Positions 26,596 through 28,907 of a DNA stretch of 64,000 nucleotides are shown one piece after another. This stretch comes from Octopus bimaculoides (lineage: Eukaryota), in the NCBI RefSeq assembly GCF_001194135.2, contig NC_068984.1, positions 117,370,566 to 117,434,565 of the forward strand, given 5' to 3'. Position numbers and translations under genes: made by a program. Every line of letters begins with the position of its first letter. Position 1 is the stretch's first letter. The notes below the pieces were generated by a model. It was not told the origin of the DNA, made no database searches, and saw only the letters and a list, made by a program, of their open reading frames with translations.

Positions 26596-26601
26596 TTTAT
26601 T
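26596..26601 (-). terminator. Possible polyadenylation signal of the SOCS-box gene
   Basis: AATAAA on the minus strand about 130 nt after the stop. The context is AT-rich, so it may be chance. Confidence 0.25.
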
Positions 26602-26729: not shown

Positions 26730-27974
26730 TCACACATCAATATAAGAAGTTAGGTACTCAATAAGCCGACTTGGGAGAGGTAAATGTTTGACATCCTTTA
26801 ATGAAACTAAATGGAGAATCCTTCGGCGACATAAATACTGTAAGTTGAGGTGAACGATAGGCAGTTTATATGTGAAGACCTGCCGTTTGTAAGGTAAGTT
26901 TTTCATAACAGCAATGCAAGCTTCACTGGGTGAGAAACGGGGAAATACTTGTAGATTAACTACATCTGAAAATGGCCAGTAACAACCTTTTACATCGATA
27001 GTCATTAGCAATTCGAGCTTGTGATAGTCTATTACTCCAACAACATTTACTTTGTATTCTTTTGTATGGACAGGATGGACACAGCGTACAGCAAGGAAAT
27101 CTCCTGATTGACTGGAGCGAATTTGTTGAATACCTGCTCGTAATAAAAGTCCCTCGACAGATTTTACAATTTCTCCAGATTCAATATGTTGTACCTGGAT
27201 ACACCGGCACCAGCTCACAACAATGCAATTGTCCCCAGCCTGGGCATTAAAAGTAAGTACCTTGGCACGAAGTGACGGTGACACAGTACTTACAGTAATG
27301 TCATTTGAAGGGTGAACTCTCATTTTGCGTAGAAAATAATTGTCTGGCATTACAAGAACACGAGTGGTATGGTCTGGTCGCAACAGAATCCTTTTCTTTT
27401 TTGGTGATATGTAGCATTCATACCAGCGCCGAAGATAGTAAGCAATGCTGAAATCGGCTAGTGCCAACTGATGAGTTAAATCCAATACATAGAATACAGC
27501 CATGAGATCTTCTCGGGATGGGTTCAGTTGAAGTACAGCTAAGTTGTCATGGTAACTAATAATACAAGCCTCTTTGAACATGACAGGCAAAGAATCCCAG
27601 CAGCGGACCGGCATAGTGGTTGTAGCAGTGGTAAATGGATTCAGCCCATTGATAACTACAGAGTTTGTACAAGAGGCGGTTTTGTTGGAGACTACAGCTT
27701 CAAACATTGAAGGTAACTTCACACTGAAATGCTGACCATCTGTGTTATCAGGTTTAACAAGAATACCATTCCGTCGATGTGGATCTCTGGAACTGCTGAA
27801 GTTAGTCTTGTCAGTGAAGCCACTAACATTTTTAATACCTTGTAGCCATTTTGTATAAGAGCAGGACCACACCAGCTCCCCACTGTTTGTTTTGAACAAA
27901 TGTTCAAACGAATCCCGATTGCTAAGCTGGCTAACTTTCAGGGAGGGATTGTGATGGCTGTAACAGCTTCCCAT
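26730..27974 (-). CDS. Uncharacterised SOCS-box protein (414 aa) with putative beta-propeller region and N-terminal acylation motif
   Basis: The only long non-repetitive ORF in the window. ATG at 27974 in GCCATGG context gives MGSCYS. The C-terminus NLQYLCRRRI...LPLPSRLIEYL matches the SOCS BC-box plus Cul5-box. Blade-like motifs include YISPKKKRILL, RSSQSGDFLAVR and RFSPSEACIAVM. The track's TTG start at 28010 is probably not used. Confidence 0.85.
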   Translation of the reverse strand: MGSCYSHHNPSLKVSQLSNRDSFEHLFKTNSGELVWSCSYTKWLQGIKNVSGFTDKTNFSSSRDPHRRNGILVKPDNTDGQHFSVKLPSMFEAVVSNKTASCTNSVVINGLNPFTTATTTMPVRCWDSLPVMFKEACIISYHDNLAVLQLNPSREDLMAVFYVLDLTHQLALADFSIAYYLRRWYECYISPKKKRILLRPDHTTRVLVMPDNYFLRKMRVHPSNDITVSTVSPSLRAKVLTFNAQAGDNCIVVSWCRCIQVQHIESGEIVKSVEGLLLRAGIQQIRSSQSGDFLAVRCVHPVHTKEYKVNVVGVIDYHKLELLMTIDVKGCYWPFSDVVNLQVFPRFSPSEACIAVMKNLPYKRQVFTYKLPIVHLNLQYLCRRRILHLVSLKDVKHLPLPSRLIEYLTSYIDV

Positions 27975-28032
27975 GGCAGTGTTTTGAAGGCAGGAACGGT
28001 AAGGTAACAAATTACCTTTTATTTGTCAGAAA

Positions 28033-28045
28033 CCTGTAAAATATA
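28033..28045 (-). promoter_or_regulatory. Probable splice acceptor of the SOCS-box coding exon (5'UTR intron)
   Basis: Minus strand reads gtatattttacag|GTTTCTGAC, so the exon would start at 28033, 59 nt upstream of the ATG. Confidence 0.55.
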
Positions 28046-28102: not shown

Positions 28103-28626
28103 CAGTGGTTCCCAAACTATGAGTCGCGACCCACTGATGTGTCACGAACGGAATCCTAGTGGGTCGCAAAAAGTTATAAAATTACGCATTAGCTNNNNNN
28201 NNNNNNNNNNNNNNNNNNNNNNNNNNNNNNNNNNNNNNNNNNNNNNNNNNNNNNNNNNNNNNNNNNNNNNNNNNNNNNNATCAAGCAGTAGGCTTTTTTC
28301 ACGAACTTAACAAATCAGAGGTGGTCATTTTCTCAAGTTATTTATTCGTACGTAATCGTAAAAAGGAAAAGTCTGTTTTTACCTATTTATAGAGAACTTT
28401 AACTAGGCGCAGTACAACACTGATCGAGCCAATAACAGTTACTGCTTCAAGGTTTTGTATTAGAGTTAATACCTGCCCATAGGGTATGGAGACGTTGAAA
28501 CAGTTATAAAACGTTTTGTTTCACATTTAATATAACCCTAACCCTAACCCAGTAGAGTTAAGTGGGTCGCCATAAATTGGTGTCATAAATAGTGGGTCGT
28601 GTCTCTAAAAAGTTTGGGAACCACTG
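28103..28626. mobile_element. Non-autonomous hAT element (MITE) with 8-bp target-site duplication
   Basis: TIRs CAGTGGTTCCCAAAC / GTTTGGGAACCACTG. Identical 8-bp TSD GTCTACAT at 28095-28102 and 28627-28634. Confidence 0.92.
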
Positions 28627-28834
28627 GTCTACATTATTTATAGAAGAGAGGACAAGTCAATAATATTTTTCTTCTCTTTGATAGTTTACAAATGCTTGCA
28701 GGAAAAAAATTGAGAGAAAAGTATATTAAGATATGAATACAATGGTAATTTATTTTCAAATGCAGAGATGCTGTAAGAACAGCAGAAACAATGGGTAAAT
28801 TACCCTTACAAAGCAGAAAAATTAGTCAACAAAC

Positions 28835-28907
28835 AGCTATGGGACTCGAACCTATATCTCTTGATATGACTCCAGCTAAGTGCTTTACCATTAAGCTAAA
28901 CTACCTA
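28835..28907 (-). repeat. tRNA-derived head related to the 21.4-kb unit
   Basis: Minus strand GGTAGTTTAGCTTAATGGTAAAGC...GGTTCGAGTCCC. Both flanks are also similar to the 312-bp unit. Confidence 0.55.

What the first reader, a model, noticed from the sequence alone, without database searches (positions are those of the whole stretch)
26730..27974. SOCS-box protein of an unfamiliar class: candidate Elongin BC-Cul5 substrate receptor with a divergent beta-propeller
Seen: a 414-aa ORF ending in a canonical BC-box (LQYLCRRRI) and Cul5-box (LPLPSRL), with no visible SH2, ankyrin, SPRY or GTPase motif. Several blade-like strings recur in the middle and C-terminal region (ISPKKKRILL, FNAQAGDNCIVVSW, SSQSGDFLAVR, FSPSEACIAVM). 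Established: SOCS-box proteins (SOCS, ASB, WSB, SPSB, RAB40, TULP4) recruit substrates to ECS E3 ligases. Inference: this is a lineage-restricted propeller-SOCS receptor distinct from WSB, whose substrates are unknown.
Basis: partly seen in the sequence, partly recalled or inferred. Interest (0 to 1): 0.7.

Follow-up and report, generated by a model that had tools for sequence, protein, structure and literature searches.

The report
Myristoylated propeller SOCS-box protein, Spiralia-wide
This octopus gene encodes an uncharacterised protein conserved in molluscs, annelids, ribbon worms and rotifers, which combines a lipid-anchor signal, a divergent beta-propeller and a canonical SOCS box, so it is most likely a membrane-tethered adaptor that hands unknown targets to the Cullin-5 ubiquitin ligase.

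Summary
A 414-aa ORF lies on the minus strand at 26730-27974. It ends in a SOCS box that passes Pfam's curated cut-off and has a textbook BC box and Cul5 box.

Pfam and PDB sequence searches recognise nothing in the first ~370 residues. Two AlphaFold2 models (pTM 0.80 and 0.85) give an all-beta propeller. Foldseek matches only WD40-type propellers, and none closely (TM <= 0.42).

The gene is real and constrained:
- dN/dS is 0.044 against Octopus sinensis.
- Orthologues share 41-47% identity across gastropods and a chiton; two partial or fused bivalve models match at 44-54%.
- Full-length relatives exist in an annelid, a nemertean and a bdelloid rotifer, and in a distant clade from unidentified eukaryotes.

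It is not WSB or TULP4: no WD40 signature was found, and none of ten SOCS-box-only tail hits scanned had a WD40 domain.

- The family starts with a conserved N-myristoylation motif (MGxxxS/T), plus Cys4 in cephalopods.
- The coding sequence is intronless in the three phyla checked.

Best reading: a membrane-anchored CRL5 substrate receptor of a new SOCS-box family. The substrate is unknown. Expression and binding were not testable here. The gene model is already in RefSeq as "uncharacterized".

The parts
26730..27974 (-). Complete intronless CDS, 414 aa plus stop
   Evidence: ORF list and translation. An in-frame stop lies 15 codons upstream of the ATG. The product is 99% identical to the protein named XP_036357614.1; against the Octopus sinensis assembly there are 3 conservative I/V differences. 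dN/dS is 0.044.
27957..27974 (-). N-terminal MGSCYS: N-myristoylation consensus (Gly2, Ser6) with Cys4 as a possible palmitoylation site
   Evidence: M1 and G2 are invariant in 22 of 22 mollusc orthologues. Of 114 family-like proteins, 82 start with MG and 65 of those have S/T at position 6; about 13 more have an internal MG start. Lipidation itself is inferred.
27825..27938 (-). N-terminal helix-strand-helix (aa 13-50). Strand 34-39 probably closes the last propeller blade
   Evidence: DSSP of the AF2 models shows H19-28, E34-39 and H40-50, with pLDDT about 90 in model 2. W43 is invariant. The closing role is inferred; coordinates were not inspected.
26859..27761 (-). Divergent beta-propeller (aa ~72-372), about six four-stranded blades; presumed substrate-binding domain
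   Evidence: AF2 gives pTM 0.80 and 0.85. Foldseek gives about 455 PDB hits at E<=1e-3; the 50 best listed in each search are all beta-propellers, nearly all WD40-type. Pfam shows only sub-threshold WD40-type hits.
26748..26846 (-). SOCS box (aa 377-409), three helices
   Evidence: Pfam PF07525 scores 29.6 bits against a cut-off of 23.5 and is found in 42 of 42 family members scanned. The models show helices 378-389, 392-395/397 and 402-408.
26817..26846 (-). BC box NLQYLCRRRI (aa 377-386), the Elongin C-binding helix
   Evidence: Across 51 aligned members: L378 51/51, C382 49/51, R383 50/51 and I/L/V386 50/51.
26751..26792 (-). Cul5 box VKHLPLPSRLIEYL (aa 395-408)
   Evidence: It matches the published consensus PhixxLPPhiPxxPhixx(Y/F)(L/I). 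Conservation: L398 49/51, P399 43/51, L/I400 47/51, P401 44/51, Y/F407 49/51.
27975..28035 (-). 59 nt of 5' UTR preceded by a polypyrimidine tract and AG (putative splice acceptor; AG at 28035-28034)
   Evidence: Sequence read. The 59 nt are identical in O. sinensis and the AG is kept. Splicing was not shown.
26596..26601 (-). First AATAAA after the stop, 129 nt downstream; possible poly(A) signal
   Evidence: Motif search. Its use was not tested.

Best explanation
The ORF encodes a member of an undescribed family of SOCS-box proteins. The proposed mechanism has three steps.

1. The initiator Met is removed, Gly2 is N-myristoylated, and in cephalopods Cys4 may also be palmitoylated. This places the protein on the cytosolic face of membranes.
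2. The divergent beta-propeller (aa ~72-372) binds a substrate that is still unknown and probably sits near a membrane.
3. The C-terminal SOCS box recruits Elongin B/C through its BC box and Cullin-5/Rbx2 through its LPLP Cul5 box, so the bound substrate is ubiquitinated.

Shown here: the ORF, the SOCS box with both sub-motifs, a confident propeller prediction, strong purifying selection, distribution across Spiralia, and conservation of the MG(x3)S/T start.

Inferred: lipidation, membrane location, Elongin BC/Cul5 binding, ligase activity and the nature of the substrate.
For: - SOCS_box passes Pfam's gathering score and is present in 42 of 42 relatives scanned.
- BC-box and Cul5-box key residues are kept in 84-100% of 51 members that share only about 20% identity overall.
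- AF2 models have pLDDT 76 and 83 and pTM 0.80 and 0.85: an all-beta core followed by a three-helix tail.
- The 50 best Foldseek PDB hits in each search are propellers, nearly all WD40-type and several of them cullin-ligase receptors or APC/C co-activators (DCAF1, Cdc20, Cdh1). Probability is 1.0 for nearly all, E about 1e-7.
- dN/dS is 0.044 against O. sinensis, with 19 synonymous and 3 conservative I/V changes.
- Against cuttlefish, pN is 0.12 while synonymous sites are saturated at pS 0.84.
- Mollusc orthologues are 41-80% identical. Full-length relatives occur in Capitella, Tubulanus and Didymodactylos.
- The distant clade is homologous over 359 columns (hhalign probability 100%, E 1.9e-40).
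- 82 of 114 family-like proteins begin with MG, and 65 of these have S/T at position 6.
Against: - There is no direct evidence of expression. The Logan contigs I checked are genomic or of undetermined type.
- No binding or lipidation data exist, and no paper mentions the family.
- Foldseek TM-scores are low (<= 0.42), so the propeller is not close to any solved one.
- A SOCS box can also act mainly as a stability or regulatory element of its own protein.
- Several distant members lack the MG start.
Confidence: 0.6

Rival explanations
1. It is simply the octopus orthologue of WSB1/WSB2 (or the WD40-SOCS part of TULP4), diverged beyond easy recognition.
For: The architecture is the same: a propeller of about 370 aa followed by a C-terminal SOCS box, with a similar total length. 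Some members give sub-threshold hits to WD40-type propeller families. The distant-clade profile weakly touches WD40 proteins over 7-20% of its length.
Against: No WD40 (PF00400) or other propeller family reaches threshold in any of 42 members. The family profile, run against 1.84 billion representative proteins, gave 101 hits; ten tail hits matching mainly the SOCS-box end were scanned, and none had WD40 while one had SPRY. The conserved MGxxxS/T start and the intronless CDS mark a separate family. From my own knowledge, neither is a WSB feature. I could not align real WSB sequences directly.
Confidence: 0.05
2. The protein binds Elongin BC but is not mainly a substrate receptor. The SOCS box would instead control the protein's own stability, or let it compete with other receptors, while the propeller does something else at the membrane, such as scaffolding in the manner of G-beta.
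For: G-beta chains are the most numerous of the top Foldseek hits, and the model has an N-terminal helix before the propeller, as G-beta does. From general knowledge, SOCS boxes are known to modulate the stability of their own proteins.
Against: The Cul5 box, which is needed only for cullin recruitment, is conserved as strongly as the BC box. That argues for a full ligase assembly. From general knowledge, all characterised propeller-plus-cullin-adaptor architectures act as receptors.
Confidence: 0.15
3. The ORF is a non-functional retrocopy, or a gene derived from a transposon or virus, sitting in repeat-rich DNA.
For: The CDS is a single exon in a repeat-rich, heavily masked region that contains transposon remnants.
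Against: dN/dS is 0.044. Orthologues are full length and conserved across four phyla. The CDS is also intronless in abalone and a nemertean, so this is the ancestral gene structure and not a recent retrocopy. There is no paralogue in the window. The viral structure library gave only generic WD40 propellers from giant viruses.
Confidence: 0.02

Closest known systems
WSB1/WSB2 (WD-repeat and SOCS-box proteins; CRL5 substrate receptors)
   Same: A propeller followed by a C-terminal SOCS box, a total length of about 420 aa, and the presumed Elongin BC-Cul5 mechanism.
   Different: WSB proteins have canonical WD40 repeats that Pfam recognises; this family has none. There is no detectable sequence relationship outside the SOCS box. 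This family also has a conserved N-myristoylation motif and an intronless CDS, and the named members are all from Spiralia.
Rab40 (SOCS-box GTPases)
   Same: A SOCS-box protein held on membranes by a lipid anchor, that is, a membrane-localised CRL5 receptor.
   Different: Rab40 has a GTPase domain and C-terminal prenylation (general knowledge). Here the domain is a propeller and the inferred anchor is N-terminal myristate, possibly with palmitate.
SOCS1-7/CIS
   Same: The SOCS box. The best PDB sequence matches, all weak (E 0.12-0.88) and confined to the SOCS box, are SOCS1, SOCS4 and SOCS3.
   Different: This protein has no SH2 domain. The automatic name 'SOCS6_7' given to the cuttlefish orthologue is not justified.
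DCAF1, Cdc20 and other WD40 ligase receptors or co-activators, and G-beta
   Same: They are among the best structural matches to the predicted propeller.
   Different: They are seven-bladed canonical WD40 proteins that use other adaptors (DDB1-CUL4, APC/C). TM-scores are only 0.3-0.4 and sequence identity is about 10%.
TULP4
   Same: It has a WD40-like region and a SOCS box.
   Different: From general knowledge, TULP4 is very large (about 1,500 aa) and has a C-terminal tubby domain. No tubby domain was found here.

Membership tests
SOCS-box superfamily (Elongin BC-Cul5 receptors) | SOCS_box domain (PF07525) above the curated threshold | tested here: met
   29.6 bits against a cut-off of 23.5 at aa 377-409; found in 42 of 42 relatives.
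SOCS-box superfamily (Elongin BC-Cul5 receptors) | BC box (S/T/P/A)LxxxCxxx(A/I/L/V) | tested here: met
   N377-L-QYL-C-RRR-I386. L378 is kept in 51/51, C382 in 49/51 and position 386 is I/L/V in 50/51. The first position is N in octopus and S, N, T or D in most others, a minor departure.
SOCS-box superfamily (Elongin BC-Cul5 receptors) | Cul5 box PhixxLPPhiPxxPhixx(Y/F)(L/I), as opposed to a Cul2 box | tested here: met
   V395-KH-LPLP-SR-L-IE-YL408 is an exact match. LP(L/I)P is kept in 43-49 of 51 members.
SOCS-box superfamily (Elongin BC-Cul5 receptors) | Physical binding to Elongin B/C and Cul5/Rbx2 | not testable with these tools
   This needs co-immunoprecipitation or reconstitution.
WSB1/WSB2 | Canonical WD40 repeats recognisable by sequence (PF00400 and related families) | tested here: not met
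   No WD40-type family reaches threshold in 42 members; only scattered hits at E 0.006-0.2.
WSB1/WSB2 | Orthology or sequence relationship to WSB outside the SOCS box | tested here: not met
   The profile search of 1.84 billion representatives gave 101 hits. Ten tail hits matching mainly the SOCS-box end were scanned: nine had only a SOCS box and one had SPRY plus a SOCS box; none had WD40. No real WSB sequence was aligned directly.
TULP4 | C-terminal tubby domain and a very large protein | tested here: not met
   The protein is 414 aa and has no tubby hit.
Beta-propeller fold | A toroid of four-stranded antiparallel sheets | tested here: met
   Two AF2 models, pTM 0.80 and 0.85, have 22-23 strands grouped in fours. 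The listed Foldseek hits are all propellers, probability 1.0 for nearly all. This is a prediction, not an experiment.
Beta-propeller fold | Blade number | tested here: inconclusive
   The strand pattern suggests six blades, the last closed by N-terminal strand 34-39. The best hits are seven-bladed and TM-scores are low.
N-myristoylated proteins (NMT substrates) | Gly at position 2, a small uncharged residue at position 3, and Ser/Thr preferred at position 6 | tested here: met
   The octopus start is MGSCYS. MG is invariant in 22 of 22 mollusc orthologues. Of 114 family-like proteins, 82 start with MG and 65 of those have S/T at position 6.
N-myristoylated proteins (NMT substrates) | Actual lipid attachment and membrane localisation | not testable with these tools
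   This needs metabolic labelling and a G2A control.

The most novel reading that the evidence does not exclude
This is the founding description of a SOCS-box family as old as Spiralia, and possibly older given the unidentified distant clade. In it, an intronless gene encodes an N-myristoylated propeller receptor, that is, a dedicated membrane-tethered CRL5 receptor class with no counterpart in vertebrates or ecdysozoans. In at least one unannotated genome it has expanded to several paralogues.
Probability: 0.5. Interest if true: 0.55.

Novelty: new variant of a known kind. Interest (0 to 1): 0.45.

Why it matters
SOCS-box proteins decide what the Cullin-5 ligase degrades, and the known classes were defined almost entirely in vertebrates and flies. 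This family would add a class with three distinctive properties:

- It is conserved for over half a billion years in molluscs, annelids, nemerteans and rotifers.
- It carries a lipid-anchor signal.
- It uses a propeller that no domain library recognises.

That gives Pfam/InterPro a new domain family to define. It also gives cephalopod and mollusc biology a concrete, testable candidate for membrane-proximal protein turnover. The interest is moderate: the mechanism is a recombination of known modules, not a new principle.

Tried and rejected
- **PDB sequence searches.** The single sequence found nothing. The profile found only weak SOCS-box matches.
- **Expression evidence from Logan contigs.**
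  - The cuttlefish contigs are collinear with the genome and bounded by simple repeats, so they are genomic.
  - The gastropod-like contigs from eight consecutive SRA runs have no poly(A) tail and no clear splice junction, so their type is undetermined.
- **Naming the organisms of the distant clade.** None of these gave a name, apart from the rotifer Didymodactylos for one subgroup:
  - three cluster look-ups;
  - flank inspection;
  - an Rfam scan of the flanks;
  - a literature search for assembly accessions.
- **Internal repeat detection between blades.** Only blades 5 and 6 are related.
- **Virus-derived origin.** Rejected: BFVD shows only generic giant-virus WD40 propellers.
- **Pseudogene or retrocopy.** Rejected by dN/dS and by the intronless state in other phyla.
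- **Paralogues in the window.** None found.
- **Literature.** Searches for the family, its accessions, or 'SOCS box + myristoylation/Lophotrochozoa' found nothing relevant.

Full report
**Observation**

The window is Octopus bimaculoides chromosome CM046604.1, assembly GCA_001194135.2. The species name for that accession is from my memory. On the minus strand, an ORF runs from the ATG at 27974 to the stop at 26730-26732 and encodes 414 aa. An in-frame stop lies 15 codons upstream, so MGSCYS... is the first possible Met start. Pfam finds one significant domain: SOCS_box at aa 377-409, 29.6 bits against a gathering score of 23.5, E 8.4e-7. No SH2, ankyrin, SPRY, WD40, tubby or GTPase family is detected.

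**Is it a real, constrained gene?**

- The product matches the protein named XP_036357614.1 'uncharacterized protein LOC115210406' at 99% identity.
- It is 80% identical to a cuttlefish protein and 41-47% identical to full-length proteins from abalones, Gigantopelta, Littorina, Pomacea, Babylonia and a chiton. Two partial or fused bivalve models match at 44-54% over 54-84% of the query.
- Against the O. sinensis locus there are 19 synonymous and 3 non-synonymous differences, all I/V. This gives dN/dS = 0.044.
- Against cuttlefish, synonymous sites are saturated (pS 0.84) while pN is 0.12.
- The 59 nt between a polypyrimidine-AG (28035-28034) and the ATG are identical in O. sinensis. This suggests a 5'-UTR splice acceptor.
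- The coding sequence is one uninterrupted exon in octopus and cuttlefish, and also in Haliotis rufescens and the nemertean Tubulanus. Intronlessness is therefore ancestral and not a sign of a recent retrocopy.

**Wider family**

A profile of 22 mollusc sequences was searched against 1.84 billion representative proteins. It gave 101 hits at E <= 1e-3 and 45 at E <= 1e-10.

- Named full-length relatives are Capitella teleta ELT89939 (annelid), Tubulanus polymorphus XP_074652970 (nemertean), Bradybaena (snail) and Didymodactylos carnosus CAF0739841 (bdelloid rotifer).
- A more distant group of 410-450-aa proteins comes from unannotated ENA, Logan and NCBI assemblies. It is homologous over 359 columns (hhalign probability 100%, E 1.9e-40).
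- Two such paralogues sit in one assembly, GCA_022702835.1. I could not identify those organisms.
- The named distribution is therefore Spiralia-wide. No named vertebrate, arthropod, nematode or cnidarian protein turned up among the hits for which a source name could be recovered.

**The SOCS box**

The BC box is N-L378-QYL-C382-RRR-I386. The Cul5 box is V395-KH-LPLP-SR-L-IE-YL408. Both fit the published consensus (recalled from Kamura and Mahrour). In an alignment of 51 members that are as little as 17-24% identical to the octopus protein, the key residues are kept as follows:

| Residue | Kept in |
|---|---|
| L378 | 51/51 |
| C382 | 49/51 |
| R383 | 50/51 |
| L398 | 49/51 |
| P399 | 43/51 |
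| P401 | 44/51 |
| Y/F407 | 49/51 |

All 42 members scanned pass or match SOCS_box. The Cul5-specific part is conserved as strongly as the Elongin C-binding part. This is the main argument that the family assembles a complete CRL5 ligase.

**The rest of the protein**

Sequence searches recognise nothing in the first ~370 residues. The PDB search with the single sequence found nothing. The PDB profile search found only weak SOCS-box matches to SOCS1, SOCS4 and SOCS3. Pfam shows only scattered sub-threshold WD40-type propeller hits: THOC3 in 6 of 20 members, WDHD1 in 5 of 22, and PD40 and ANAPC4_WD40 in one each.

AlphaFold2 was run with two alignments:

| Alignment | Mean pLDDT | pTM |
|---|---|---|
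| 22 sequences | 76.4 | 0.80 |
| 51 sequences | 83.4 | 0.85 |

Both models show the same layout: a short helix-strand-helix at aa 13-50, then 22-23 beta-strands between 82 and 370 grouped in fours, then three helices that form the SOCS box.

Foldseek returns about 455 PDB hits at E <= 1e-3. The 50 best in each search are beta-propellers, nearly all WD40-type: Lp49, G-beta, RACK1, DCAF1, Cdc20/Cdh1, THOC3 and ribosome-biogenesis WD proteins. Probability is 1.0 for nearly all and E is about 1e-7, but TM-scores are only 0.3-0.4. The viral library gives only generic giant-virus WD40 proteins.

The propeller fold is therefore supported, but it is far from any solved example. The strand pattern suggests six blades, the last completed by the N-terminal strand 34-39. 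I could not inspect coordinates, so the blade number is unsettled. At profile level only blades 5 and 6 are detectably similar.

**Not WSB or TULP4**

No WD40 signature reaches threshold. Ten tail hits of the profile search that matched mainly the SOCS-box end were scanned: nine contain only a SOCS box and one has SPRY plus a SOCS box; none has WD40. The cuttlefish name 'SOCS6_7' is an automatic label with no SH2 domain behind it. I could not align an authentic WSB sequence directly, and I could not check that octopus also has a canonical WSB gene. That remains the one gap in this exclusion.

M1 and G2 are invariant in all 22 mollusc orthologues, and the consensus start is MGNxxS. Among 114 family-like proteins, 82 start with MG. 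Of those, 56 have Ser and 9 have Thr at position 6. About 13 of the remainder have an internal MG that aligns as the true start behind a mis-called upstream start. This is the classical N-myristoyltransferase consensus (general knowledge), and it is kept in a family that otherwise shares about 20% identity. Cephalopods add Cys4 (MGSCYS, MGACHS), a typical palmitoylation partner. Lipidation and membrane targeting are inferred, not shown.

**Mechanism proposed (confidence about 0.6)**

The protein is a myristoyl-anchored, membrane-proximal substrate receptor. Its propeller captures an unknown target, and its SOCS box docks Elongin BC-Cul5-Rbx2 for ubiquitination.

Rivals:
- An EloBC-binding scaffold or self-regulated protein without receptor function (0.15).
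- A hyper-divergent WSB orthologue (0.05).
- A dead retrocopy or mobile-element gene (0.02).

**Novelty and value**

The gene model exists in databases but is uncharacterised. No paper in the searchable library mentions the family or its accessions, and no Pfam family covers its first 370 residues. It works like WSB (propeller plus SOCS box) and, in being lipid-anchored, like Rab40, but it is a member of neither. I rate it a new variant of a known kind and of moderate interest.

Noticed in passing
window 28831-28905 (-): Rfam tRNA match (42 bits against a gathering score of 29) that ARAGORN did not call. It is probably a tRNA-derived SINE or a degenerate tRNA, about 850 nt upstream of the gene.
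   Followed up: no
window 9462-10472 (+): A 336-aa ORF with weak helix-turn-helix hits (HTH_23, DUF7769). It looks like a Tc1/mariner-type transposase remnant.
   Followed up: partly
window 670-997 and 46753-47068: An interspersed repeat of about 330 bp, present at least twice in the window and many times in the orthologous O. vulgaris region.
   Followed up: no
window 28207-28278, and many other N runs throughout the window: The window is heavily N-masked or gapped. One N run lies about 230 nt upstream of the ATG, inside the putative 5' intron or promoter region, so upstream gene structure cannot be read there.
   Followed up: no
L010 (O. vulgaris GCA_951406725.2, OX597817.1) 5001-65269: The annotated gene range for the identical protein starts at the CDS and runs about 59 kb further downstream. 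This is an odd model, either a long 3' extension or a merged gene.
   Followed up: partly
P0002 (Acanthosepion pharaonis) and P0023 (Pinctada imbricata): There are annotation problems in relatives. The cuttlefish orthologue is auto-named 'SOCS6_7' without an SH2 domain. The pearl-oyster model of 619 aa carries F5/8 type C domains and is probably a fused gene model.
   Followed up: no
L026, L027 (GCA_022702835.1) and L028 (GCA_022702875.1): Two distant paralogues of the family (P0152, P0158) occur in the same unannotated NCBI assembly. This points to paralogue expansion in an organism I could not identify.
   Followed up: partly
P0066/P0200 (Didymodactylos carnosus): The rotifer members are 735 aa long because of a long Ser/Asn/Thr-rich low-complexity insert within the N-terminal half, while keeping the MG start and the SOCS box.
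   Followed up: no
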